Assembly: GCA_001179505.1 (NCBI GenBank)
Contig: CDMY01000878.1
Span: forward strand, 124,001-188,000
Direction: 5' to 3'
Length of the DNA stretch: 64,000 nt
Origin: Vitrella brassicaformis CCMP3155
Lineage: Eukaryota > Protista > Chromerida
The position numbers were made by a program, and so were the translations under genes. This document shows positions 17,843 through 58,345 of this stretch, piece after piece. Positions within the stretch are counted from its first letter, which is position 1. Every line of letters starts with the position of its first letter. The notes under the pieces are model-generated. The model did no database searches, had not been told where the DNA came from, and was given only the letters and a program-made list of their open reading frames with translations.

Positions 17843-20800
17843 CTATTGGCCCTTAGCTACCAGATCCAGCGTGAATGTACAAAACCCGAGGATACTCTCC
17901 GCCCACCCTACTACCTCAATCATGTCACACTGGATAGTGAGGCTGTCGAGTGAGTATGAAGCCATTACCCGCTCATAGCACTCACACGCCAACGCACGCA
18001 CCTCCTTCTCTGCATGGGCTATCTGCTCCTCATCTGACGCCCCCTCCTCGCCTAGCTCAAACTCACTGGGATCGAGCTGCAGTCTCAGATGCGCTTTGGA
18101 TGGCCGCACGTGGGTCACGACACTCATCACCGACAAGGCCTGATCTTTGTTGAGATCAATCAGATCTTCATCATCGCCAAACGACAGCGATGTCACGGCA
18201 GGGCGTGCGAGTGGTTGGCATGCATGAGGCAACGCACGCACGTGATGGCCTAAAACGACGCTGACCTCATCGATGCGCTCAGTGGGAAGCAGTGGCAGGC
18301 ACTCAGACAAGACAGAGAGGTCAGAGGTTCTGAACTGGACTGATCTGACGTGGCGCAGGCTGCCTAGAAGTGTGCTAAGCTTGTTGGGGCCGGCAGGAAA
18401 GCGCCAGGCGCCCGCAGGGGGGTGGGCTCGGTAGGACAGATTCGCCAGGTTGGACTCGAGGCGCTCGACTGCGGGAAAACAGACGTTGTTGCCGTCCTCG
18501 TCGACTTCGGTCAGGAATGGGGGAATGCTGTCCGACACGATCTCCGCGCTCTGCACGCTCTGACGGCCCTCCTGCGAACGGCCGATCCACAGCTGCGTCA
18601 CGTTGGGAAACTTGAGCACGTCCTTCCACGACTCGTCCAGAGGCGTGCCGCCACAGAAGAGCCACACCTGAGACGAAGGCAGCCATACATACGAACCATG
18701 CGATTTGATTCTTGTCTGTCATTCGTTGTCCCACTTACCTCCTCAGCTTGTTTGGCGACTTGGTTGACCACGTCAGCTACAGGGCCACGCACAGCAGGGA
18801 AGACAGTCGACGCCTCCTTGCTGCAGTCGACTCTCATGCACTTGCCGTAGTTCAGCTGCCACTCGACCGTGGCGCCGACTCGTCGGGCCCACGCGAGGAA
18901 GTCGGGCAGGGGGCGGGTCAGGTCGCCGAAGTTGTGGTTGATGGGGCAGTCGTACACGAACTCGATCGTCTTCTTGACTCCTGATTGATGGATGATCGAA
19001 AGACAGGGCGTCAATTCATGCATCGAGTCAGGTCTCTCCTATCCCCTTTGTCCGTCATCTCATCTCACCTTGCATCTCCGGTTTGCTCCAGAAGTTCTCC
19101 AGAGATCTCTGCAGCTCAGCTAGATGACCATTCCTCAACGCACGCTCGCTGACGCGCACCCCGCGGATGGTGGTGAGCCGCTTGGACTTGCCCAGGGCAG
19201 CGATGAAGTCGGGGCTGTCGTGATCGCACACGATGTTGACGGCGAGTGTCATGAGCTGAGGGGAGGAGCTCGCGATGTGGGTGAGGCCCTTGAGAGCCCT
19301 ACGAGGGACGCGGAGACCTCGGCAGTCTTCCAGGGCAGGGAAGGTGGTCCATGTGGCTTCACTGCAGAAAACAACAACACACAGATGAATGTGTGTGCAT
19401 GGTCAGCCTGACTCACCTGAAGTATATGATCCACGTGTCGCATTCCACGTGCAGGTCGGTGAGTGCCGTGAAGGCCACCGGAGGGGGCGCACACCACGCC
19501 GCACGGAAGTTGAAGTTCCCGCCATCGCCGTTGATGTAGAGGTGTGTGAGGGATGTCTTGGCGGCCTCCAGACATGTCGCTACGAAGGAACGACGGCTCG
19601 AGTTGTGGTCCTCGTACGGTCCTGCAGATGACGGGATGTGGGCTGTCGTGACGTTGGCCTGAACCAGACAGACAGACAGATCCACATACACGCATGGATG
19701 TCGTGGGCGGATGTGAGCGGCACGGTGTGGGTCTCGCTCACCAGTTTGCCCCTCAGACGTGTCTCTGTGTCCAGGTCGAGGTTGTTCCACGCCTTGGCCT
19801 CCTTCTCAGCGATGGTCAGGTTGCGGTAGATGCCGAAGGGCGTGGCCTTGCTGCTGCCGTCTTGGGCGCTGCTCGGGCGTTGGCTGTCCGAGTGGTAGTC
19901 GGCTATGCTATTGATGCCCTTGTTGAGGAGACAGAGGACGGTGGCCTCCCTGGTGGTCAGCCACGAGGCCATGTCACACAGCAGCGGGCCCTCCAGGCCA
20001 CACAGACACGGCCCACCGACAACCTGACACACACACACGCACGAGTAGCGAGTGTGTATCTTAAGGGGCTTTATGTGTGTCGAGGCTGACGTTCGCGTGT
20101 TGCTGATGTTGGTCGTGTCCCTGGTCGTCTTGCTGGGGGCTGCTCGACACATCAACTGCAAACACAACAGCGAGACAGACAGACGGACGGCGTTGGGTGA
20201 ATCGATGCATGAGAGTTTGATGCACACACTTTCTGTGTCAATCGTCAATACGTACCACCTCCACCACTAGCACCAGCAGCAGCAAAGGTAGCATGCTGAC
20301 CCGGTCGGTCCTCCACACGCGCTCGCTTGCTATCCGACACACCAGCTACCTGCACACACAAAGAGAGGATTAGAGGGCAGATGGTGGTTTGCCTGACTGG
20401 CTGTTGTCAACACACACACCGATATGGATGATCCATGGGATGCCTTCTGAATCCTTTCCACGGTCAGATCATCCGCACGACCACTGCAGTCGCCCTGTTG
20501 CGCAGGCAGCACACGCACATGACACACCGCAGTTGCAATGCATACCTCTGCCACTCCGCCCTGTGCGTGAGTGGTGTTGTGTATGTTGCTCAGACAGTCG
20601 GCCGCCTCCTTGAGGCAGTCGCCGCCACGGCTCGTGTGGCCCACCGCCACAGACAGGTCGCCGACCGTCAGTGAGGCGTCATTGCCAGCTACCTGAAGCA
20701 ACACAAGGATGGATACATGACATACGGAAGACACCAACACACATACCACCCGCCCCACTCACTTGTGATTCAAGTGTATGGATGAGCGTCTTGATGCGAT

Positions 20801-21220
20801 CTATCTCATGTCGAAACTGACGGAGGCCCTCATCGCGATCAGCTTCCTGTCCACAAAGACATACACACACACACGTACACTCACGCCATCCAGCCAGTGT
20901 ACGCGGCATCAGGCGGTTCATGGTAACGTACCGGACGGGTCGGCCCGTCGTTGCCATCTTGCTGCATAGCTGCAGCCTGCGGCTCAATGACCTCGTCTGC
21001 ATGACCACAAACAACACAATCCGCATTGAATGGTCACCCCGGGCCGGTGCTGTTTCATGTGTGTCTGTGCACCTGTGAGTGAGGCCCTCAGCCGCAGATG
21101 CCTACGTCTGCCCTCAAGTGCTGCACGGGCAGCCAACCAACGCTGATGAAGACCTCCTGACCGCCTCCTGAGCACACAGCGGCCGCATAGCCTAGCGCTG
21201 CAAGTGACAGAATTCATCAT
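17843..21220 (-). CDS. Lineage-specific F-box-like / LRR-like protein (multi-exon)
   Basis: Exons link in frame from MMNSVT through a coiled-coil (EGLRQFRHEIDRIKTLIHTLESQ), SKRARVED and an F-box-like segment (LEGPLLCDMASWLTTREATVLCLLNK), then LRR-like repeats (SLTHLYI, LTDLHV, FPNVTQLWI) to the stop at 17843. Confidence 0.6.
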
Positions 21221-21307
21221 TTCCCATGATTTCTGTACCCTCCCCCCTCACCTCTCGCTCAGTCGCCATCAAATCACCATCGCGAGGTTTTGCTTCCTTT
21301 TTTTCTC

Positions 21308-21481: not shown

Positions 21482-23791
21482 ATGGCGAAACGACACTGCT
21501 CGCGTCAAGAGCAGGTAAGAGAGAGGGCGGGAGGCAAACAACAAAGAGAAACCGCGACCCAGGCTGCGCTTTGTCGTGTTTGCCTCAGCAGGAGGATGTC
21601 GATGGGATGTTGGTTGACGATGATGATGATGGGCTAGTGATGGATAGCGATGACATGGACACACCGAACCATGGACAGCAGGTGCGCCGACACCCTCAGA
21701 CCACCTATCTGCATCGATATCCACACACAAGTTCAACCAAACACATGGGGCCGCCTGCGTGTGGTGGCTCGTTGCTTCTGCAGTCCTCTGGATGTTCGCT
21801 TCCCCTGTGGACAATCCCGCCCGACACTCTCTCTACCATCGTCGGCCCTTTGCTAGGGACGCAGTACATCATCGGCACCCTCTCGGTCATACGCAAGGCA
21901 TTCGCGACCATCGCAACAGACCCCTCCACCCACCTCTTCGTCCACGTCCAGACCGCCAAGGCCATCCACCTGACCGACATGCAGCTCAGCGTATGGCTCA
22001 CCCGACTGAGCAAGACCAAGCGCGCCGTGCTGCTCTGCCCGGTGACGGAGAGCATGGTGCGTCTGGTGGAGAGCATGCGCAACACTGTGGCCTACCTCGA
22101 GATGGATGAGCCGGCCGGACGACTGCGCTGTCCGTCCAGGCAGCCATCGCCATCCGGCCGTCGGGAGGAGTCGCGGATGCAGTTTGCGGCGCTGGAGGAG
22201 GTGTGTGTGGGAGGCGAATGGGTGCGGGTTGCTCGTACCTACGGATGGGCACTGAGGTGACTGACACGACGCACCGCGGGCGCGTTCATACAATGCCGCA
22301 CACGTTTGTTGGTTGTGCGCCGTTTCAGGTCGCTTGTGTCGCTGAGCATTCGCGACGGGCCGTTGACGGGCCGGTCGTCGTTTGCCTCGGGTTGCTACGG
22401 CATGTACTGGCGGAGATCCGCTTCGGCGCTTCGGTCGCTGACATACGACGACAGCGGATGCTGGGACTTCAGTCGCAGCCGCGCCCATCCCGACCATCTG
22501 GCGCAGCTTCTGCGGCCAACCAACTCCGTGCCTCACCTGCACGCCCTCAAGTGAGGAGCATGATAGAACCGAAACACGCGCGTGTATGTGTATCCACTTA
22601 TTCTCTTCTCTCTCAGGCGCCTGCGCTTCACCAGTCAGCAGTCGTGCTTCACCCACGGAGGCACACAGCTGCTGGCTCAGCGGGGCCTCAGGCTGGAGGA
22701 GGTCGACATCGCCCTGTCCCCCGGATACCTGTCGACCCAAAACATCAAGGTACGATCTTCATCCACAAGGCGACAACCCCTCACGCATTTATCAAGACAC
22801 AGTCCTCTCTCTCCCTCTGTGTCTGTCTGTCTGTCTGTCTGTGTGTCTGTGTCTGTGTGTGTCTGTGTGCGGCGTGTAGGATGTCGATGACTTTCGCCGG
22901 CTGTGCCTCGCGCCCAGCGGCACCGAGGACTGGAGCAGGAGCAACATCATGTTCGAGCTGCCACTGCTGTGGCAAAACGTGCCCACGGAGCCGGTGTGGT
23001 GGGCGAACGGGGCGTCCGTCCCCACCGTCCAACTGCTGGCCTCTGCCGCTACTCATGTCGGCTTCGGTACATACTGGCCTGCAGGCGAGACCTTCCCCGC
23101 ACTCTACAGCACACTAGCGTCGCTCGTTTTTTGTCGAGCGCAAGAGCTGATACTCTTTCTTTCCTCCCCGTCCACAGACATACCCGAGGCCGTGGTGGCA
23201 GACGTGCCGCGCCTCTTGCCGTGCGTGAGGCGGGCAGAGCTGCTTTTCGAGCACCTGGCTGACCTGTCCGTGCAGAGAATGCTGAGTCAGCTGCCGATGC
23301 TCGAGGCGCTGGTCAATACGTTCTGTGTGGTTGATTATGTGGGTGAGGTGGAGATGTGCATGTGGGTGGACCAGACAGAGAAGGACAGGCCGATAGATGA
23401 GCGCGTTCACCGCATCATCGTCCACTCGCACTTGCACTACGAGCAAGGCGACACAGAGAGTTTCGACTTCTACTGTGGCGAGACAGTTTGGAACTGTGTG
23501 CAGGCGATTGGCGTTTTCCCTCGCCTAGACAGCATCGATGTCGACATCACGGTGGAGGGGCATCTTGCAGGGGGCGACATAGTGAGCATGCTGCAAGAGG
23601 TCACAACGTGCCGTCCTGACTTGGCGGATGACCATCAGGTAGCTTTTCACCTCGTGCTGCATGACCATGGCTTTGAGATGGTCGAGCTGCCCCGGCTGGC
23701 ATTCGACTGTCGTGTGGAGGTGCGGCGGCTGGGCCTGCCCGTCCCCTCACAGAAGCGCATCACTGACTACTTCTCTGTGGCCAACCAGTGA
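21482..23791 (+). CDS. F-box-like / LRR-like protein with C-terminal PIP box (paralog A)
   Basis: Short first exon MAKRHCSRQEQ; F-box-like LWTIPPDTLSTIVGPLLGTQYIIGTLSVIRKAFATIA; ends QKRITDYFSVANQ*. Homologous to 47518-49624. Confidence 0.7.
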
Positions 23792-24788
23792 GACAGACAT
23801 CGGCTGGGGGGCACAGCACAGATAGCAGCCTGTGTGTCTAGTGGGTGGGGCCGGGCTGTACAGATGGGCTTGTGGGCGGGATATACTTGGTTGCGCGTGT
23901 CAATCCTTTCTGCGTGCTCTTTGTGCATGTGCGTGTGGGCGGTCGGTGTCTCACCCATCAGCATCCCGCCAGCTGCAGGTGGGTGATGAAGCGACTGCAT
24001 CCGACGCCCATGCGCAAGGGGCCGGTATTCGTGTGATGTGTGTGCGTGTGCGGTTGAGACTCTGTCATGTGTGAGTGCACCCATGTTGGTTGTGCCGATG
24101 GATGGATGGATGGAACGCATTCACGTATATGTTCTGCATGGTGAGTATCTCATGTGACGCACAAATAGGCCACCTGGCCCCCTGCCGCCCGGACGGCCAC
24201 AAAAATGCCAAGGAGTCGACTGACACGAAAGCACCAATGGCACCTGCCGGCAACAGACGCATGAGGATGAACGAGTGAGGCCAAACACCCACATGCAGGA
24301 AAACTCGATACACTCCCTCTACACCATCCTGCCTCTACGCCTTTCGCGCATCGCTTTGGCGGCCACCTGGTGGGTGACGGCTTCACCACAGGCACGAAGG
24401 CTGCCCGGGGGAAACACATCACTGGCTCCCCCAGGAAGCGACGCGCGACAGGCGAGACGCAGCTGCAATCCACGCACCGGGTAGACACACACGGCCCCCT
24501 CACACAAAACAGGGCCACGCAAAACGCATGGATGGATGGATGGCCGCGAGAAAGCAGCACACTGGCAGGCACCACTGTACTGAAAAAGCCGATCTGCTCT
24601 GCTCTCACATGTCATGCACCAGCCGACACAGACGGATACGTAAAGCCACGCAGGCCCACCAACACACATTACACTGTCGGAGAGACAGCGGCGAAAAACC
24701 GCCCGCACAGAAGACGGGGGTCGGTCTGTCTGTCTGTCTATCTGTCTGTCTATCTCTCTCTCTGGTACGTTTGTGGCCATGGTCATCG

Positions 24789-27700
24789 TTATGGTGTCTC
24801 TTCGCTTCCGGCGGCCTCCTCTATGTCGTCGTCAAGGGGCTCCACAGGCACGCGCCAAAAGTTAAACGAGCTGAACTGCACACACACACACACACACACA
24901 CGCACACACCAAGACACAGATAAATGGATGCATGCATCTGTCAGCTCAGCTGTCCGCGAGTACGTGCGCCTGCCTACTTGTGTGTGGGAGAGGGAGGGGA
25001 GAGGGAGGGGAGAGGGAGGGGAGAGGGAGGGAGGGAGGGAGGGAGGGGGGCAATGAGGCAAGCTCGGGGCAGCCAGAAGACGACAACGAATGTCTGTCAA
25101 AACCACCCCACCTGCCTAATGGTGTGTGTCTTCTTCACTCACGACGCTCTGTCCATATACGCAGCTAAAGCACTATCAAAGTCCCCTCCCTAGTCACTCA
25201 CTCACCCACTCACTGCCAGCGTCTCTCTGCCTCACGCAAGAGTCTTCCTGGCCTTCATGTTCCGCTCTACAGCCGGATCGAACTCTCTGCTCCACCCCGC
25301 ATAAGACACAGAAACAGCCCCTCTCCCTCCCCCTCCCCCTCCCCGCCCGCCTCTCCTCTCGGTGGTTGTGGTGGTGTTAACCTGGTCGTCTGCAGATGGC
25401 GACTCCTGGCCCTGATCTTTGTCTCTGTCGTCGCCGGCCGCCGCCGCGTGGGCGTCCTCCTCCCCGCCACGCACCGAGGGGAACATCTCGTGCACTATCT
25501 GGCGCATCGTTTGATACCTGACAAGAGAGAGAGGGGGGGAGAGAGCGTGGGTGTGGGGCGGGATGGTGTTTGTGTGGTGTTTGTGGAGTGGGGTGAGGGA
25601 GTACGGACGTTCTGGCGTAGGTGGTGTTGCAGTGGTGGATGAGGCCTTTGGTGTCGATGATGAAGACCTTGGCCTCGGGCACACCCACAGAAGTGTACGC
25701 CCGGTAGTCCTGATGTCACACACACCACACACAGACCCGCGCTTTGTCTGGGGGCGGGTGGCTTGGTGGGCGTGTGGGTGGAGCCTGACCGATTCCCTGT
25801 TGCCGAATCCGGCGTAGAATGGGTTGTGCTCCTGCGAGAAGAGGCCGCGGATGTCGCGCAATGCAGCTATCTTGAACACCTGCAGACAGAGAGGGATCAT
25901 GGGAATGTAGGGGTAGGGCGGTGGGTGGTGCGGCATGCTGTGGTGCGTCGTTTGCGTGATCACATACATGTGGCTTCCTGTCGATGACCTCCCGTCTGAA
26001 GGACGACAGCAGACGGTCCGGGCTCAGAATCAGCGGGCCATCTGGCAACCCACCCACACACACACAATGACTGTCTTGCCTTGTGCATCCTTCCTTGATT
26101 CTCTCACCGGGCAGCCTGTCCATCTCGCTTTGGCACAGCCCGAAGAGGTAGTCTCTCGTGAGGTCCGCCTGCCCGATGGCCCGTGCCGACATGTATACGA
26201 TCCTGTAGCCGTTCTTGCGGATGGCCGTGTACAGCGACGCCACACCGAGGTGCGACCAGTCGCGGCCGACGATCGGCATCAGCTGACCCAATAAATCGGA
26301 CCTGACAGACACAGGCAGGGAGGGAGAGAGACAGATATGGGTGTGGTGTCTGGGTGTGGAGTGGTGTGTTGTGTGGGTGGGTGACTTGGTGATGGTTCCA
26401 TCGACGTCAGAGACGACGATCTTGGCGTTGGGGGGCCAGAAGTAGATGGTGGATGTGATGCTCTGGGTGCCCTGCACACACGCACCCAGCAATCACACCA
26501 CCCATACACGCACACAGACACGCACACAGACACAGACACAAACACACACACATTTGTCGGCCGTCCGCTGCCCACCTGGAGCGACGACGTGACGGAGAAG
26601 GTGACAGGGTTGGGCCCCGGCTTCAAATTCAACGAACGCTGCACACACTCACACACACGCACACATATACACACACACACGTACCAACCCATGCCTCCCT
26701 CCCTCCCTCCCTCCCTCCACTCACCAGCTGCTCTGTCGTGGGTCTCAGCGACTTCCGGTAGCACTTGGATGGCGACCCCTGTGTGGTGGGTGTGGGCGTG
26801 GCGCAGCACAGCACGCTCCCCGCCCCACCCGCCGGCCCCCCGTTGCCGTTGACCTCCCGTGCGTGGGGTATGGGTGTGAGGCCGGCCCCCGCCTCTCGCT
26901 GCAGCCCGTCGGCCTGCAGCACCGGGGTGTCGGGGGAGGGCGGCATTGGGCCCATCTCAAGGTCAGCGCCGACTGTCTTGGCTGAAGGCAGAGAGGAGGG
27001 AGGGGTCTATGTGTGTTGGTGGGTGTCCGTGGTGAGCTGGCAGACATGCGCACCTTTTCGTGGGATCAACGGGGCGGAGGGCGACGAGTTTTCTGAATGG
27101 ACGGCGATTCACACACAAGCGACAGACAGACAGCCAGACACATGAGCATGCTATAGGTCCATCGATCGACCTATCGAAAACACACCTGCGCTGCGCCCTC
27201 CCCCCACTACCTACCTGTGTCGGCCGCCTCGTGTGCGGCAGATGGTGCCTGCTGCGGCAGGTCGCTCCGGCTCACTCCGCGCCCGAACCACCCACGCCAG
27301 GATGACCCGCTCTGGGGCGCCTTCGACACGTTGACCGTCCTGACACACACAGAGAGAGGAGATCGTGTCCGTTTCCCCTCGAAGCTTCTTCTGTGATGTG
27401 CGAGGGAGCTGGTTGCTTACGTGTTCATGAGGTTCTGGACAGCCGAGAGGGAGATCGGGCGGTTGAAGACGATCCACCTGCAGACACAAGTAACAAAAGG
27501 CAGGCGGAGAGTATTACTAACCGTGCCCCTGTGGGTGCATTTGCGAGGGGCGGCTGGCGTACGATGTGAGAAGAGGGTATGCGACTTTCCATGGGTAGTA
27601 GGGAGGCGTCTGGTCGAACCGCGCCACCAGCGATGGATGGAACCACAGAGAGGGGTCCGCCTGCATATATATACACAAACATATGGACGGCTGGGTGGTG

Positions 27701-28488
27701 CGACAAATCGAGGAACCAACGTGCTGCGATGTGTGTGTGTGCCTGCATGAGAGACCCACCTCCAGCTGTTGCTGCGAGACGATGTTGGCGTTGAAGACGT
27801 CCTCGTCGTGAAGCGCCTGATCCTGACCCCCCCNNNNNNNNNNNNNNNNNNNNNNNNNNNNNNNNNNNNNNNNNNNNNNNNNNNNNNNNNNNNNNNNNNN
27901 NNNNNNNNNNNNNNNNNNNNNNNNNNNNNNNNNNNNNNNNNNNNNNNNNNNNNNNNNNNNNNNNNNNNNNNNNNNNNNNNNNNNNNNNNNNNNNNNNNNN
28001 NNNNNNNNNNNNNNNNNNNNNNNNNNNNNNNNNNNNNNNNNNNNNNNNNNNNNNNNNNNNNNNNNNNNNNNNNNNNNNNNNNNNNNNNNNNNNNNNNNNN
28101 NNNNNNNNNNNNNNNNNNNNNNNNNNNNNNNNNCCCCCCCCCCCCCCCCCCCCCCCCATACACACACGGGGACACTTACTGCCTGCCTGCATGTCGCCTT
28201 GTCAGGTGCCTCACCGGTGTGCCGTGCAGCAGGTGTCCACACAGCGAGAGCTCCACCTTGTGGTCGCTGTCGTCATCATCCTTTACATACACGCACGAAC
28301 GTGAGCCAGCACACACCAAGATCAATCAAAGCTGCACACTCATGGCATCGATGGCCTACCACCAGGTCTGCGAGTCGCTTCCTGTGCGCGTGTGGGCTGC
28401 CGGCGTCGGTGAGAGTTTCGCCCACCTCCTTCCTCTCGGGCAACGCGCCCCACTTCCACTTCCACTGACCCTCAACCTGACACACGCA

Positions 28489-28524
<36 letters not shown>

Positions 28525-29306
28525 TACCGTCTCCCGCTGTCCGCCCTTCGTCTGTCTGTCTGGGCTCCTTGATGCATTTGCTCACATCCTGGGATTTGTC
28601 GAGGTCTGCCGGCGCGGACACCGGCTCCCGCACGTCAATGCCCACCATCTTCCCACCCTCTCCCTCTCCCTCTCCTACGCCATTCGCCACGCCCAGCCCC
28701 TCCCCCTCCCACTCAGCCTTGATGCCGTGGGTCACCCCCTTCCTCTCATCACCCAGCTGCCACTCCCGCGAAGCCTTGTCGGTCAGCACCGCCTCTGAGA
28801 GGGTGAGGGGCATTGGGGGCGGGCGGAGGCCCTCGGTGTCGGTGGGCATCATGTAAGGGCGGGGGGAGAGGATGGGCGAGTGCAGGGGGGAGGCCAGGGC
28901 GTTGCCCGAGACGGGCTCCTCAGTCTCTTCCACGAAGTAGGCCTCCCCCGCTGCCCCCAGCTTCATGCGCAGGTCGGTGGGCTGGTCGTTCACGGTGATC
29001 GTCACCTGCACATACGCACATGCACACAGACAGACAGGGAGAATGAGATAGATGCATGTCCCACGGCTGCGCGGTTTTTTCTCGGCGTCTGTGTGTGTTG
29101 TGTGTCTTTCTCTCTCCCTATCTCTATCAGCTCACGATCTTTTCCCTGCTCCTCAGCAGCTTTGCCTTGCCGAATCTGACATGGAATGGCGTGCTCTTGA
29201 TGGAGCCGTCGGGCTGCGGGACGGCGATGATGTCGATGCATCCAGACAGGGTGGCCTGGTTGATGTCGAGCGCTGATGACACGCTGCTCAGGAACTTGCC
29301 CCACAT
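24789..29306 (-). CDS. PAH1: Lipin / phosphatidate phosphatase (N-LIP, middle domain, C-LIP HAD)
   Basis: [36 protein letters not shown] (N-LIP); VELSLCG (middle domain); [29 protein letters not shown] and FNFWRVP (C-LIP). Confidence 0.95.
27834..28133. other. Assembly gap (300 N) inside a lipin intron, flanked by poly-C
   Basis: N run; C7 before it and C24 after it (28134-28157). Confidence 0.99.
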
Positions 29307-40195: not shown

Positions 40196-43100
40196 TCAAT
40201 TGCTGCGGGACGTCGACTGCATGCGCCGGAAGAACGCCTCAAGCGGTGAAGGTAGGGCCGTCGCCATGGTCGCCTGCACCGCACGGCATGGCCGCCACAC
40301 CAAACACAGGGAGAGACACAATGCAATATGCGCGTGTCTCTGTGATTGGTACGTGTCCCATCCTTGCCTGTGTGGTGTCTTGTCCGATGGTGAGCGTCAG
40401 GCTCTTCTGGATCCACTCGGGCAGCTGCTGCTGAGTGGCACCCACACCATAGCTGCATGGACGGACCACACACAGAGGGCAGACAATGCACGTATGGCTC
40501 TCTTTGCCGGCGAGTGTGTGTGTTGCGACCGTGAGTCGATGAGTAGGATGGCGCCGTAGTCGCTGCGCGATCGGATGGCACGGCCGACACACTGATGCAT
40601 TCACGACACAGACAAGGGGAGGGTGACGGTGGCTGGGTTCGCGCCCGTCTTCCCTCCCTCCCTCCCTCCCTGGCTGCGTGCCTGGTTGACGGCCTTCATG
40701 CAGAGACACTGATAGTACTCCCGCCCTGCAGGATATGAACGGATGGATGGATGGTACACCACGCATGCAATCGTCCACCCACCTCCAGTCTGTACCTGTG
40801 ATCCGCTGCTGTGCGTCGCCCTCCCCCTCCCGCCTGGCCCGCGACGCAGCCGTGTCGAGGAAGTTCATCTTCTGCCGGATCTTCAGATCCTGAAGGAAGG
40901 CGGAATGGAGAGACGCAGAAATGTATGTGTGTGTGTGTGTATGTGATCCGTCATGCCTTTCTGGGGTATGGGCATCCGACGACACAGACACCTCTGGCCA
41001 GGTCGTCCTTGAAGTTCATGCCCTGCACACAGCCAGCCAGCGGGCAAACACAGATGGGTGTGGTTGCTGGGTGGGGGTGACCTCGCTGAGCTTGCCGCCG
41101 ACTACACTGAACAGCAGCGCCCCTCTGCGAGCACGACCGTCGGTCCCCAACACGTACTGCCTGCATCATCCATCCATCCATCACCACACACACTCCCTCC
41201 ACCCTCACATGTCTCCTCCCTCCGTCCCCTTCAACGTCACCTGAAGTCCCGAAACAGCGGCAGCTCATCCCCATCGCTGCCCGCCTTGCCACCACCAGCC
41301 CCACCCCTTGCACCCGCCCTCTGCTCCACAAACACCCGCTTGTGTTTGGCGATCTCGCTGCTCACGGCGGGGTGGCTCTTGATGTACGTGTCCAGATGTG
41401 CGAGGAAGTCGAATGACGGCACAAAGACGACCAGGCCGGCGGGGACGGCGGCGCAGAGGCTGGCGATGAATGCGGTGAGGTTGCGGAGGGTGGCGTCTTG
41501 GGAGCGGCTGGCGTAGTCGAACTTCCACGGATGGCCGTCGGGACCTGCAGTAGAATACGGTGGATGCATCGGGCGTGTGTGGATGGTGTGGGGTGTTGTG
41601 TACCGTTGGTCACGGTGGAGACGAAGACCTGCGATGGCGGTACGACGTGTGTGCCGCTGAAGTGGACGATCTTCTCCGCCGGCAGCGAAGATGACAGGGG
41701 GGCAAACTCTGACCGCACGCACAGACCATGGGTGCAGGTGGCTGTGTGTCTGTCGACTTTTACCTCGTCTGGGCTCCATGGTGCCGCCCGCCAGCAGCAC
41801 CGCTCTCGCGTCCTTGACGATGTCGTGGAACCGCTCCTCCGCGTTGAGATTCATGATCTCCAGCCGGCCCTCGACACCACTACCACTACCACCAGGCCAC
41901 ACCAGAATACGCTCTGCAACACACACCCAACACACGGATAAGAACCGTCTTCTTTCCTTCTCTCTGCCTGTGTTTGAGTGGATTACCGTCAGATGTGCCG
42001 GCCAGGAGGCCTGAGAGGAACTCCACCAGCGTGTGTAGAGATGATGACGCGTACTGCGCGTTGGGGCCGCCCGCCTGGCGGGCCAGCTTGCGACGACGGC
42101 ACTCACTGAACCCCCGCAGCTGCACGCATTCATCCACCAACACAAGAAAGGCATTCGCGTGTGCAGTTTGAATGGGTGCTGGTTGTGTTGTGTGTAGGTG
42201 TGTGCCTTTCGGAGGAACAGGGGGTCGCGGATCCAGTCTCGCAGGTCGTTCAGTGGGAAATGCTCCAGCTGCGCATCTGTAGGTATCAATGGATAGCATT
42301 GGGTTGTTTCTTTCTTTCTCCCTCCATCACTCCCTCCCTCCCTCTGTCCACACCCACCTTGCAGGAACCTTGCGATGGTGTGCGAGCGTCCCTCTGTGTG
42401 GTTGTCGGTCTCTGTCTGAATGAGGGTGTGGAGGTGGTCGCACATCTTGATGAATATCTTGAGGTTGGCGCTGTTGTTGCCCTTGAGCCACTTCTCGTAC
42501 TGAACCAAATACGCCTCCCTGACAGACGCACACACACACGCACACACACAGAGGAAATGGGTTGTGTGTGTGTGTGGAGGGGTGGAGAGGGGATGGTCTG
42601 CGTACAGGTCTTGTCGGCATCCTGCGAGTTGCGATTGCGTGATTGTGCAGCTGTGTGAAGAGTTGATGGCCTCGATCAGGTTGTGCGCCTCGTCGAAAAC
42701 TATCACACTGCCCTTGATACGGATGCCTGCACCCACACCCACACCCACACCCACACCCACACCCATACCCACACCCACACTCTCTGTTGTGTTTGCTGTG
42801 GAACGGTCATTCTCTCCCTCCCCTGAACACACCTAGCGCTTCTCGCGTGTCTCTTGATAGGATGCAGTTATACGGCAGCAGCAAAACCTGCGTCAACATG
42901 CACACACACATACACTGATTGCACCACTGGTGAGGGTATGCGGCCACAGATAGGACGTACATCTGCGTCGGGTGCGGCTTCTCGTGTGCCGAAGTATGGG
43001 CAGGAGCAGACGGACTCTTTCGAACCCCAACGCTTCAGATCTTCTATGTCTAACACCTCACTCTACACACACATCAACACGCACGCATCGTTTTTCGTCT

Positions 43101-47517: not shown

Positions 47518-49624
47518 TCACTGCACAGCAGAGAAGTAGTCAGTGATCTTGCGCTGCATCGGGTCACCGACAAAACCGATGCGGCGCACCTCCACGCAAC
47601 ACAGATGGGCCAATGGGGTCAGCTCCACGAGGTCAAAACCGGCCGCCCGCAGCAGCGCATGAAAGCGGCCGCCGCCCAGCTGGGCTTGCTCAAGCACACT
47701 CAGGAACTGGCTGTAGTCGAGTTGGCTGTCTTCCTGTCTGCCGTACTCACAGCAACTTTGCGGGCACAGATCCACCTCAAGCACAATGCTATGCAGACAT
47801 GGCAGAATGGCGATGGCATGCATGTGCATCCTGACGACTGACTCATTGGACCACTCCATCCCCTCCTCGTCGTCACAGGCACACACCTCGACAGAATGGG
47901 TAGCGCGAGACATGCGCTCGTGGAACGGCTTGTCTGCCTCTTCCTCTCCTGCCTCATCCACCCACAGCGACCACTCCCCCACCCCCTCCTCAATGTCGAC
48001 ACCACACCTGACAACCGTGAGGTTGCCCAGCTGCTCTAGCACTGACTGCACGTGTCCCTCTGCTAGGCTGGCCAGCCCTTGGCTGGCCAGCCCTTCCCCA
48101 TCGAATGAGAAAAGGTCTGCCTCTGTGACGTGAGGAAACATATGACCGATACGCGACAGAAAGGCAGCCGGCACAGGAAAGAGATTATGCCGGACCTCCC
48201 GGTAGATGCTCAGCGAAGAGACTCGGGGAAAATTGAGTTTGGACACGACAGAATAGAGTTGAGGCGAGAAGTTGTGGGCGTTGGAGAATGCTACAGGCAG
48301 TGAGGCAGAGGTAGCCATCGATGCAAACTTCTGAATGGTCTGGGCGCACTCGAGCAGGTCGGCGTCCGTCATGTGGAAGAGCGCGGAGAAGTTGAAGTAG
48401 AGTATCTCGTAGCGCCACACCTCCTCGGCACCGGCCGCCAGACACCGTATGCGAAACGCGTTGATGGCCTGAATGCCCACAACAACACATGAAAGGTGGC
48501 CAGGCCTTCACGAGCGTGCGCTCCTCACCTTTATGGAGGCCGCAGAATTGACGAACATGTCGCTCGTCATGTCAAACGCATCGAGCTTCAGGCCGCACTC
48601 GCTGAGCCGCTGTGCATCCCATGGGCCCATGTCGGTGACCGTGAGGCGCTTCAAGCTGCTGAGATCGACTCCAGCGGGCATGCCGGAGCCCCAGTGCAGG
48701 CCATCAGCATGGTCCAGCTCGAGTGTGTGTAGCGCTCGACTGAAGTGGTGCCAGGGGTGGCAGCAGCTGTAGGATGATGAAACGCACAGTGACTCAAGCG
48801 AGCTGCAGAAGAGAGGAAACATACACACACAAAGAGATACAGTATCGTTGGAAGGCCCCTAGCTGTGAGGCCGATACCTGAGCCGCCACATTCGCATTTC
48901 AGCCACTTGCACCCAATGACCAGCGACAGCGACTTGGGCCAGCACCGGGAACTCGAGCTCCACCGACGACTGATGCACCACGGGTTCGCTCCACTCGCGG
49001 TCGTCCACCTTCAGGAACGTCAGCGTCTTGCGTGTGGCCTCGATCAGACGCACAAGGCCACCCTCCACCGGACACATCATGACGATGCGCTTCGTGCGAG
49101 TGAGGCGGGGGGACCATGCAGCTGTCTGACGGTCGGTAACGGGGATGGGCTTGTGTCTGCGGGAGTTGCGGTACGTGTTCCTCAGGTAGATGGTGCGATG
49201 CATCTGTGGGTCTGTGGCGATGGTGTGGAAGGCCTTGCGGACGAGTGAGAGGGTGCCGATGATGCACTGGGTGCCAAGCAATTCGCTGAGGACGGTGCGG
49301 CGGACGTCATCGGGAAGCAGATGCAGTGACTGCAGAGACTGAAGACAAGCAAAGCAGGCACCGCCAACCAATGAACGAAAGATGGCCGAAAGCGGTTGAA
49401 TGCACTTGTGTCTGCTGCATGTATTGTGTACCTGGGCGTGCCTCTCATCAGGCTGTGTAATGGATGAGTCATCTCCACCACTGTGGCTCACAAGCGCAGC
49501 CTGATGAACGAAACACACACACAGCAGCGTGGCAACAATCATGGCTTGGCGCATGTTTGCCCGCTGCGCTGCCCGCCTCCCTGACCTCTTCGCTTCTGCG
49601 CTGCTTCTTGCTTGAGTTTGCCAT
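47518..49624 (-). CDS. F-box-like / LRR-like protein with C-terminal PIP box (paralog B)
   Basis: First exon [13 protein letters not shown]; F-box-like [40 protein letters not shown]; ends [12 protein letters not shown]. Confidence 0.7.
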
Positions 49625-57107: not shown

Positions 57108-58345
57108 TTACTGAATCACCATCCCCCCTCCGCCCCTCTGCCCCCATCCGGAAGCACACCCACCGCTCGGACCCCACGAGTGCATGCCCGTGCCCATGCC
57201 CGTCTCAGGCATCCACTCGTGGCCGTCAAAACACTCGCGGCACTCGAAGTCGTAGTGCTCCTGCTCGAGCTGCTGCTGCTGGGAAAACCACTCCTCGGCA
57301 CAGGCGTACTCGTACTCATCGACGGGATGCGGCACGGGTGAGCCGACGGGGAGCATGAAGACGTCCTCAGCGATGGTGCACATGGCCTCTGCCGGCAGGT
57401 CGCGCAGCGGCATCTGCACCACACTGTAGCTGAACTGCTGCTGCTCCTGCTGCTCTTGGGGGGAGTGAGGGGGAGGGGTCGAAGGCAAGGCTGAGCTGCC
57501 GCCATCACGGCAGAGGTGCGCCATCGGGCCCTGGCCGTAGGGGTAGAAGCTCTTTTCACACATGTAGCCCTTCTCGTACATCTGCACGCCGTCATCAGCC
57601 CCTCCTCCCTTGCGCATGCCCTTGATGCCGCCGATGCTGCTGCTGCTGCTGCTGGGCACAAACTCCTTGGCGCTCGCGTTCAGCCGGGACTGGCACTTGG
57701 GTGTCGTCGTGTCGACGACGTGTGCCTTGCCGCTGCCGCTGCCGGTGCTGGTGCTGGTGCTGGGGGCAGGGTGCGCCACCTCCGGTCCGCGCTTGTCTGC
57801 ACTGAGGGCCTTGACAGACGTCTTGGAAGCCGCCAGGGAGAAGGGTACGGGTGCTGGTGCTGATGGTGTGGGTGTGGGTGTGGGTGTGGTGACTTCGGGT
57901 GCTGTGTTGTTGCTGCTGTTGACAGGGGGTGGTGAGGGGGGAGGTGTGGGGGGCAGGATGGGCCGGTTGGGGTCAGGGATGGTGCTGCGGCTGGCTAGCT
58001 TCTTGCCGCTGTCGGGGGGGCAGACGAGCCTGTGGATGCGCTTGAACTGCATGACACACAGACAGGTGTTGTACGACATGCCCACGATGGGCGTGTGCAT
58101 CTGTTCGACGTACCTGGTTCTGCGATAGCCACGCGCTCTTCTTCCACTTGCCGTCCTCTGAGCAATCTGCGACACACGAGAAGAAGCACACACGCCCATG
58201 CCCATGGCCCACACGCGGATGCACGTGTGTGTGCGTGCGCTGGCTTACAGCTGATGATCCTGTCCAGAGTGGCCGTGACGTTCTGCCGCACAGCCGGCGG
58301 CAGGTCGCGCTGCAAATCCCTCTCGAGCTCAATTATCATCTGCAC

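What the first reader, a model, noticed from the sequence alone, without database searches (positions are those of the whole stretch)
21482..23791. F-box-like protein ending in a high-affinity-type PIP box (QKRITDYF)
Seen: an F-box-like segment near the N terminus, an LRR-like middle, and Q-x-x-I-T-D-Y-F at 23750-23773 five residues from the stop. Established: QxxhxxFF/YF is the PCNA-interacting motif, the TD pair raises affinity as in p21 and Cdt1, and a CRL4-Cdt2 degron additionally needs K/R at +4, which is N here. Inference: an SCF-type substrate receptor docked on PCNA, i.e. replication-coupled ubiquitination through an expanded lineage-specific family.
Basis: partly seen in the sequence, partly recalled or inferred. 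Interest (0 to 1): 0.7.

Follow-up and report, generated by a model that had tools for sequence, protein, structure and literature searches.

The report
Vitrella F-box-like/LRR protein with PCNA tail
This is a real, transcribed six-exon gene of the alga Vitrella brassicaformis, one of at least 25 species-specific F-box-like/leucine-rich-repeat proteins that all end in an almost unchanging motif of the kind that grips the DNA replication clamp PCNA, so they may be ubiquitin-ligase adaptors parked at replication forks, though no binding has been tested.

Summary
Positions 21482-23791 are not one ORF. They are a six-exon gene of Vitrella brassicaformis CCMP3155 (NCBI CEM36136.1). A 100%-identical spliced transcript contig confirms three of its introns and its stop codon. 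QKRITDYF sits at 23750-23773, five residues before that stop.

Exact Q-x-x-I-T-D-Y-F occurs 25 times in the 72.7 Mb genome, against 0 in the control. Every occurrence is in this family and lies 3-17 residues from a stop, including in paralogs only about 30% identical elsewhere.

An exhaustive HMM search of 1.84 billion proteins found 48 clusters. Of 30 looked up, 28 are named Vitrella and 2 are anonymous.

AlphaFold models show five parts:
- a three-helix N-terminal cap;
- an irregular LRR solenoid;
- a roughly 150-residue alpha/beta domain with no clear structural relative;
- a flexible linker;
- the PIP helix.

The cap aligns with the F-boxes of FBXL17, FBXL2, SKP2 and FBXL3, and matches Vitrella's own canonical F-boxes profile-to-profile (82%, P 1e-5). 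Pfam does not detect it.

PCNA and Skp1 genes are present. PCNA docking is likely. SCF membership is plausible but unproven, and no binding has been tested. The scan had already flagged this family elsewhere in this genome (s1-197158, s1-248703, s1-227185).

The parts
21482..21514 (+). Exon 1 (MAKRHCSRQEQ), start codon
   Evidence: The same N-terminus, MAKRHCPRQE, is found in paralogs P0001-P0003 and in the NCBI model P0052. GT at 21515.
21589..21681 (+). Exon 2, acidic D-rich stretch
   Evidence: NCBI model P0052; paralog alignment; AG/GT borders. Modelled as disordered in paralog P0003 (pLDDT under 50).
21784..22256 (+). Exon 3: F-box-like cap and first LRR-like units
   Evidence: P0052. The 3' border is confirmed by transcript contig L072.
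21799..21930 (+). F-box-like three-helix segment (LPLWTIPPDTLSTIVGPLLGTQYIIGTLSVIRKAFATI...)
   Evidence: hhalign against Vitrella canonical F-boxes gives 81.6% probability and P 1.1e-5; controls give 0.7% or less. Helices 45-83 of the paralog model align from the F-box start of FBXL17, FBXL2, SKP2 and FBXL3. No Pfam hit.
22329..22550 (+). Exon 4, LRR-like units
   Evidence: Both borders are confirmed by transcript L072.
22617..22749 (+). Exon 5, LRR-like units
   Evidence: Both borders are confirmed by transcript L072.
22880..23791 (+). Exon 6 (last LRR-like units, C-terminal domain, PIP box, stop)
   Evidence: L072 is colinear with the window from 22878 to 24878, with no further splicing. 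It is an open frame of 303 codons.
23303..23730 (+). C-terminal alpha/beta domain of about 150 residues, fold unassigned
   Evidence: AlphaFold model of the window's own residues (P0004:200-448): pLDDT 88.8, pTM 0.84. The best structural match is only Z 8.0, and Foldseek E is 5e-3 or worse.
23750..23773 (+). PIP box QKRITDYF
   Evidence: Read directly. Invariant Q, I, T, D, Y, F in 25 paralogs. Short helix in a lower-confidence tail.
23774..23791 (+). Five-residue tail SVANQ and TGA stop
   Evidence: The stop is kept in the transcript. +4 after the box is N.
23792..24878 (+). 3' UTR, overlapping the 3' end of the convergent lipin-like gene
   Evidence: Transcript contig L072 runs on into the minus-strand LNS2/lipin gene.
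47518..49329 (-). Second family member in the window (P0007, 597 aa), PIP box QRKITDYF at 47533-47556

Best explanation
The gene encodes a 621-residue protein of a Vitrella-only family. Its parts, in order, are:
- a short basic/acidic disordered head;
- a very divergent F-box-like three-helix cap;
- an irregular leucine-rich-repeat solenoid;
- a family-specific alpha/beta domain;
- a flexible linker;
- a canonical TD-type PIP box at the extreme C-terminus.

Most likely the tail docks the protein on the PCNA ring. Docking is through the hydrophobic pocket and the interdomain connector loop, both conserved in Vitrella PCNA. The F-box-like cap would then recruit Skp1-Cul1. The LRR and C-terminal domain would select a target, which is ubiquitinated on replicating or repairing DNA. 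The many paralogs would differ in target.

Shown here: gene structure, transcription, motif conservation, fold, family size and taxonomic restriction. Inferred: PCNA binding, Skp1 binding and ligase function.
For: - Spliced transcript and true C-terminus.
- 25 of 25 exact QxxITDYF in the genome lie in this family, each 3-17 residues from a stop, against 0 in the control.
- This family supplies 26 of the 35 TD-type PIP boxes encoded in the genome.
- Positions 2 and 3 of the box change codons and residues but stay mostly K/R. That is protein-level selection for features that raise PCNA affinity.
- The last 14 residues are the most conserved block of the last exon.
- The box lies after the last strand, in a lower-pLDDT tail with a one-turn helix.
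- Vitrella PCNA keeps LQAMDSSHVSLVSL and LGIP as in Arabidopsis PCNA1.
- F-box support: hhalign 81.6% against 0.7% or less in controls. VIA top rows are F-box/LRR proteins aligned from their F-box start: 6w66_B Z 11.8, 5jh5_A 11.0, 6o60_C 10.9, 1fqv_A 10.6, 4i6j_B 9.5. Foldseek's top hits are COI1, TIR1 and D3.
- Skp1 genes are present.
- Precedents for E3 components that dock on PCNA by their own PIP box: Cdt2 (PMC6312923), TRAIP (PMC4700480) and FBH1 (PMC3711418).
Against: - No binding or activity data exist.
- Pfam F-box models miss the window protein, and 53 of 54 relatives.
- A genome scan with PF12937 does not hit any family locus.
- The family profile finds no F-box protein among PDB sequences.
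- The VIA Z scores of F-box/LRR proteins form a continuum with TLRs, RanGAP and CD14, so the LRR solenoid alone could drive the ranking.
- The full-length fold was computed on paralog P0003, not on the window protein.
- The codons of I-T-D-Y-F are almost frozen at synonymous sites. Some constraint on the motif is therefore not at the protein level.
Confidence: 0.5

Rival explanations
1. A PCNA-docked LRR adaptor with no ligase role. The tail binds PCNA, but the N-terminal helices are only a solenoid cap and do not bind Skp1. The protein would tether or block other factors on the clamp, or compete with other PIP clients.
For: Pfam and profile-sequence searches see no F-box. LRR proteins without F-boxes score nearly as well structurally. 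All the PIP-box evidence listed for the best explanation applies here too.
Against: The conserved L-x-x-L-P-[DE] and V-x-K-x-F pattern, the 81.6% hhalign match restricted to this one window, and the alignment starting at the F-box of five different FBXL proteins are more than a generic cap would be expected to give.
Confidence: 0.25
2. The motif is kept for something other than PCNA. It could be a different protein partner, or an RNA/DNA-level element in the last 24 coding bases, with the PIP-like peptide as a by-product.
For: Synonymous sites are frozen: ACT 24/25 although ACT is 14% of Thr codons in these exons; ATC 25/25; CAG 25/25. The 15-mer ATCACTGACTACTTC occurs 22 times and only here.
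Against: Positions 2-3 vary in codon and residue yet stay basic. A more distant member has QRPITDFF with other codons (ACG GAT TTC TTC) and still fits the PIP rule. All eight positions fit the best-binding variants measured on human PCNA. Both kinds of constraint can coexist.
Confidence: 0.1
3. The protein is itself a PCNA-coupled degradation substrate (a PIP degron read by CRL4-Cdt2), destroyed in S phase like Cdt1, p21 and Set8.
For: A TD pair is present. Paralog P0003 has R at +4. FBH1 is an F-box protein handled this way (PMC3711418).
Against: The window protein has N at +4. The residue at +4 is not conserved in the family: Q, N, V, D, E and R all occur. Presence of Cdt2 in Vitrella was not tested.
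Confidence: 0.07
4. It is cargo of a mobile element that uses PCNA, as the pogo transposase does.
For: The PIP box is pogo-like. The copies are dispersed. The 1.8 kb upstream of the gene is also repeated at several loci.
Against: No terminal inverted or long terminal repeats flank the gene, only microsatellites. There is no transposase or integrase domain. The gene has six exons, and the exon junctions confirmed here fall at points where the paralog proteins align continuously. Paralogs are as low as 20-30% identical.
Confidence: 0.04

Closest known systems
FBXL-type F-box/LRR substrate receptors (SKP2, FBXL2, FBXL3, FBXL17, KDM2B; plant TIR1, COI1, D3/MAX2)
   Same: An N-terminal three-helix cap is followed directly by an alpha/beta LRR solenoid. 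These proteins give the best structural matches, aligned from their F-box start. There is a profile-profile match to Vitrella's canonical F-boxes.
   Different: The family is below Pfam detection. Its repeats are irregular. It has an extra C-terminal alpha/beta domain of about 150 residues with no clear relative. None of the matched FBXL structures is described as carrying a terminal PIP box (my knowledge, not tested here).
Cdt2, substrate receptor of CRL4-Cdt2, with its own C-terminal PIP box (PMC6312923)
   Same: A cullin-ligase substrate receptor that docks on PCNA through a PIP box at its C-terminal end, so receptor and target meet on the clamp.
   Different: Cdt2 is a WD40/DCAF protein on Cul4-DDB1, is a single gene, and has a non-canonical box (MRKICTYF). 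Here the protein is F-box-like/LRR, the box is fully canonical of the TD type, and there are at least 25 paralogs.
TRAIP, a RING E3 ligase with a PCNA-binding PIP box (PMC4700480), and FBH1, an F-box helicase with a PIP box (PMC3711418)
   Same: Both are ubiquitin-ligase components recruited to forks by direct PCNA binding. FBH1 shows that one protein can carry both an F-box and a PIP box.
   Different: TRAIP is a RING protein. FBH1 is a UvrD-type helicase whose PIP box serves its own degradation. Neither has an LRR or belongs to an expanded family.
Drosophila pogo transposase PIP box QKKITDYF and the PL peptide (PMC8191301)
   Same: Seven of eight residues are identical and the eighth is K to R. 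Both have the TD pair, Ile at position 4, basic positions 2-3 and Y-F at 7-8, each reported to favour high affinity.
   Different: The resemblance is at the motif level only. There is no transposase domain here.

Membership tests
Canonical PIP box (PCNA-interacting short linear motif) | Q-x-x-[ILMV]-x-x-[FY]-[FY] | tested here: met
   QKRITDYF at 23750-23773. The same pattern is found in 25 paralogs.
Canonical PIP box (PCNA-interacting short linear motif) | Lies in an exposed, flexible segment, commonly at a terminus | tested here: met
   Five residues from the transcript-verified stop. It follows the last beta strand. pLDDT falls to 64-74, with a one-turn helix on I-T-D-Y.
Canonical PIP box (PCNA-interacting short linear motif) | Conserved among relatives beyond the surrounding sequence | tested here: met
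   The last 14 residues are the most conserved block of the last exon. Q, I, T, D, Y and F are invariant in 25 copies that are otherwise down to about 30% identical.
Canonical PIP box (PCNA-interacting short linear motif) | Physical binding to the host's PCNA | not testable with these tools
   A PCNA gene is present, with a conserved pocket strand and LGIP connector. No multimer prediction or assay was available.
PIP degron (CRL4-Cdt2 substrates) | TD at positions 5-6 plus K/R at +4 after the box | tested here: not met
   TD is present, but +4 is N (SVAN). The residue at +4 is not conserved among paralogs.
F-box (Pfam PF00646 / PF12937) | Sequence match to the family model above the curated threshold | tested here: not met
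   No hit for the window's exon pieces even at E up to 10. One of 54 relatives reaches E = 0.013. The PF12937 genome scan hits no family locus.
F-box (Pfam PF00646 / PF12937) | Remote homology to bona fide F-boxes | tested here: inconclusive
   hhalign of the family N-terminal profile against 15 canonical Vitrella F-boxes: 81.6% probability, P 1.1e-5, 45 columns. Reversed control 0.3%. Fourteen other windows give 0.7% or less. The hmmsearch profile against PDB finds none.
F-box (Pfam PF00646 / PF12937) | Three-helix fold placed before the repeat domain, as in FBXL proteins | tested here: met
   Helices 45-48/51-61, 65-74 and 76-83 precede the solenoid in the paralog model. Model residue 44 aligns with the first F-box residues of 6w66_B, 6o60_C, 1fqv_A and 4i6j_B. 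This was done on paralog P0003, which is 59% identical to the window protein.
F-box (Pfam PF00646 / PF12937) | Binds Skp1 | not testable with these tools
   Skp1 genes are present on C47 and C278. No interaction test was possible.
Leucine-rich repeat solenoid | Repeated strand-turn-helix units forming a curved solenoid | tested here: met
   Alternating strands and helices from residue 90 to about 455. Foldseek E 2.8e-6 to 1e-3 against COI1, TIR1, D3, NLRs and TLRs. VIA Z 9-12. No Pfam LRR model hits.

The most novel reading that the evidence does not exclude
Vitrella has evolved a private arsenal of 25 or more SCF receptors that sit permanently on the sliding clamp. Each would carry a different LRR/C-terminal recognition surface. 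Together they would form a replication-fork surveillance or chromatin-inheritance system with no counterpart in other eukaryotes, for example one that marks foreign or misplaced proteins on replicating DNA. The frozen 15-base coding sequence of the motif would additionally act as a shared RNA-level control element for the whole family.
Probability: 0.15. Interest if true: 0.85.

Novelty: new variant of a known kind. Interest (0 to 1): 0.6.

Why it matters
PCNA is the platform on which replication-coupled protein destruction is organised. The known ligase components that dock on it directly (Cdt2, TRAIP, FBH1) are single genes. A species-specific family of at least 25 F-box-like/LRR proteins, all ending in a near-optimal PIP box, accounts for about three quarters of all TD-type PIP boxes encoded in this genome. 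That points to a much larger, diversified use of the clamp as a ubiquitination platform in a free-living relative of apicomplexan parasites.

It also offers a natural series of paralogs with one constant anchor and variable recognition domains. Such a series could be used to ask what is targeted at forks. No paper describing the family was found. All annotated members are 'unnamed protein product'.

Tried and rejected
- **Single bacterial-style ORF:** rejected, because there are stops in all frames.
- **Trypanosomatid origin:** my first guess from composition. Rejected on seeing GT..AG introns and the Vitrella hits.
- **A further intron after the motif:** the stop TGA sits in a CA|GTGAG context, like the gene's real donor sites. 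Rejected, because the transcript contig is unspliced from 22878 to 24878.
- **The NCBI model's intron inside the last exon:** rejected, because the transcript and the paralogs keep those 37 residues.
- **Pfam on the exon pieces and on 54 relatives:** nothing useful.
- **Rfam and tRNA scans of the window:** nothing.
- **Family profiles against PDB sequences:** nothing significant.
- **C-terminal domain against PDB (Foldseek, VIA wide) and the ESM Atlas:** only background-level matches to halves of EEP nucleases, the RNase E DNase-I-like subdomain and GNAT folds. No fold was assigned.
- **Mobile-element reading:** no terminal repeats.
- **Joined model not submitted:** I did not hand a joined six-exon protein of the window gene to any tool. 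The full-length fold used paralog P0003. The window protein was covered by database proteins P0052 and P0004 and by single-exon references.

Full report
**What is at the coordinates**

Translating 21482-23791 gives stops in all three forward frames. The DNA shows short GT..AG introns.

My model has six exons: 21482-21514, 21589-21681, 21784-22256, 22329-22550, 22617-22749 and 22880-23791. The product is 621 residues.

The organism is Vitrella brassicaformis CCMP3155. The window is C878:124001-188000 of a 72.7 Mb, 1064-contig assembly. The gene is annotated as CEM36136.1 / A0A0G4GYC9, 'unnamed protein product', 584 aa (P0052).

A JGI transcript contig (sample 3300017148, L072, 4104 nt) is 100% identical to the window. 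It lacks exactly the introns 22257-22328, 22551-22616 and 22750-22879. It then runs colinear with the genome from 22878 to 24878, into the 3' end of the convergent lipin-like gene. Three conclusions follow:
- The gene is transcribed.
- The TGA at 23789-23791 is the real stop, although it sits in a donor-like CA|GTGAG context.
- The NCBI model wrongly removes 37 residues inside the last exon. Paralogs keep the homologous stretch.

The two 5' introns rest on the NCBI model and on the conserved MAKRHCPRQE...DVDGM start of the paralogs.

**Is the motif more than chance, and is it conserved**

The own-genome search finds at least 29 matches to the last exon and at least 41 to the N-terminal exon.

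A back-translated pattern for Q-x-x-I-T-D-Y-F hits 25 places, against 0 for the reversed control. All 25 are family loci. In all of them the motif lies 3-17 residues before a stop.

Relaxing the pattern to Q-x-x-h-T-D-[FY]-[FY] gives 35 hits against 1 in the control. Twenty-six of them belong to this family, including QRPITDFF in a distant member.

By coordinates, 25 of about 39 distinct N-domain loci have the exact box downstream on the same strand. These include all of the closest relatives. About 13 of the more divergent loci lack it, and their annotated products end in basic tails.

Within the last exon, the final 14 residues are the most conserved block.

Positions 2 and 3 of the box change both codon and residue (KR, KK, RK, RR, RL, LL) but stay mostly basic. 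That is what protein-level selection for PCNA affinity would give. In the peptide study PMC8191301, basic residues at positions 2/3, Ile at 4, TD at 5/6 and Y-F at 7/8 each favour binding. The pogo box QKKITDYF gave 8.8 nM in a p21 frame.

**Taxonomic reach**

A profile of six members was searched with HMMER against 1.84 billion representative proteins. It found 48 clusters at E <= 1e-3. Thirty were looked up. Twenty-eight carry Vitrella names. Two are anonymous short contigs.

No paper mentioning the family was found.

**Architecture**

The full-length paralog P0003 (620 aa, 59% identical to the window protein) was folded with a 54-sequence family alignment. The model has pLDDT 80.5 and pTM 0.78. 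It shows:
- a disordered head (residues 1-43);
- three short helices (45-83);
- about a dozen strand-helix units up to roughly residue 455;
- a more compact alpha/beta part;
- a one-turn helix on the PIP box (611-614) in a low-confidence tail.

The window protein's own last 249 residues (P0004:200-448) gave pLDDT 88.8 and pTM 0.84, with the same layout.

Foldseek ranks COI1, TIR1 and D3/MAX2 first (E 2.8e-6 to 1e-4). NLR and TLR solenoids and FBXL2/FBXL3 follow.

VIA-align puts several F-box/LRR proteins near the top, each aligned from model residue 44-49 to the first residues of its F-box:

| Protein | Chain | Z |
|---|---|---|
| FBXL17 | 6w66_B | 11.8 |
| KDM2B | 5jh5_A | 11.0 |
| FBXL2 | 6o60_C | 10.9 |
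| SKP2 | 1fqv_A | 10.6 |
| FBXL3 | 4i6j_B | 9.5 |

Non-F-box LRR proteins score almost as high, so this is support and not proof.

The C-terminal alpha/beta domain (window 23303-23730) has no convincing relative. Its best Z is 8.0, which the tool's own notes place at background level. Foldseek E is 5e-3 or worse.

**The F-box question**

- Pfam sees nothing in the window's exon pieces.
- Only one of 54 relatives touches F-box-like, at E = 0.013.
- A PF12937 scan of the genome finds 32 canonical sites, none of them in the family.
- A family N-terminal profile finds no F-box protein among PDB sequences.

I then aligned 15 canonical Vitrella F-boxes from that scan and compared profiles with hhalign. 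The family window 41-93 matches at 81.6% probability (P 1.1e-5, 45 columns). The reversed F-box gives 0.3%. Fourteen other family windows give 0.7% or less.

The conserved pattern L-x-x-L-P-[DE]...L-G-T...L-S...F-H...P-x-x-H lines up with LPxE...L...VCKRW.

I rate a true, very divergent F-box at roughly 60%.

**Partners**

PCNA_N hits lie on C385, C546 and C553, and Skp1 hits on C47 and C278.

The C385 PCNA aligns best with Arabidopsis PCNA1. It keeps the pocket strand (LQAMDSSHVSLVSL) and the connector LGIP.

**Degron**

The window protein has N at +4 after the box. Paralogs have Q, R, V, D or E there. A CRL4-Cdt2 degron is therefore not a family feature.

**Unexplained**

The codons of the box are almost frozen: CAG 25/25, ATC 25/25, ACT 24/25, GAC 24/25, TAC 24/25 and TTC 23/25. 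ACT is only 14% of Thr codons in the same exons. Other conserved residues nearby use three to five codons.

The 15-mer ATCACTGACTACTTC occurs 22 times in the genome, and only here. Both flanks diverge freely, so long-tract gene conversion does not explain it. The distant QRPITDFF copy uses other codons. An added RNA-level constraint is possible.

**Mobile-element reading**

No terminal repeats surround the gene; there are only microsatellites. The 1.8 kb upstream is repeated elsewhere, and I did not resolve what that repeat is.

**Limits**

- No multimer prediction was available.
The full-length fold is of a paralog.
- Earlier scan notes had already described this family on other contigs. I treated them as leads and re-derived each point here.

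**Verdict**

PCNA docking is likely (about 75%). Skp1 binding is plausible (about 60%). The combined 'PCNA-docked SCF receptor' reading stands at about 50%. This is a new variant of a known kind.

Noticed in passing
window 23750-23773 and 24 paralogous sites (L047-L071): Synonymous sites of the PIP-box codons are almost invariant (ACT for Thr in 24 of 25, although ACT is 14% of Thr codons in these exons). The 15-mer ATCACTGACTACTTC occurs 22 times in the genome, only in this family.
   Followed up: partly
window 23054-23164: The NCBI gene model CEM36136.1 splices out 37 residues inside the last exon. The 100%-identical transcript contig and the paralogs retain them, so the public protein is probably mis-modelled.
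   Followed up: yes
window 19507-21266: The 1.8 kb upstream of the gene is repeated at 70-80% identity on C878 (about 216-218 kb), C395, C603 and, in part, on C632, C398, C375, C311, C446 and C456, some of these apart from any family gene. Its nature (another gene family or a repeat) was not resolved. The 222-aa minus-strand ORF there has no Pfam hit.
   Followed up: partly
window 23792-28633: The transcript contig L072 joins the 3' UTR of this gene to the convergent minus-strand lipin-like gene (LNS2, Lipin_mid), which has at least 16 small exons. The two 3' ends overlap or abut in the assembly.
   Followed up: no
L070 = G000:C1040:4201-7224: A close paralog carries a 15-base tandem duplication just before the box (SSQKRISSQKRITDYF), and its last exon matches in two pieces with TGA stops between them, so it may be a decaying copy.
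   Followed up: no
L069 = G000:C887:116121-119144, and L056: One subfamily ends QKRITDYFTPLTH / QRRITDYFTPLAR. The PLTH tail recalls the C-terminal FFKPLTH of human DNA polymerase eta quoted in PMC8191301. This is probably convergence or chance.
   Followed up: no
G000: C223:12726 and 55541, C235:39793, C296:82996, C342:22274, C358:85828, C363:21373, C365:44508, C840:117669: Nine further TD-type PIP-box matches lie outside this family (for example QSSLTDFF twice, QQRITDFF, QQEITDFF). They are candidates for the ordinary PCNA clients of Vitrella. Not examined.
   Followed up: no
window 41240-42832 (-) and 57111-58214 (-): ORF pieces with a DEAD_2 (XPD/Rad3-type helicase) match and with a PAM2 (PABP-binding) motif.
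   Followed up: no
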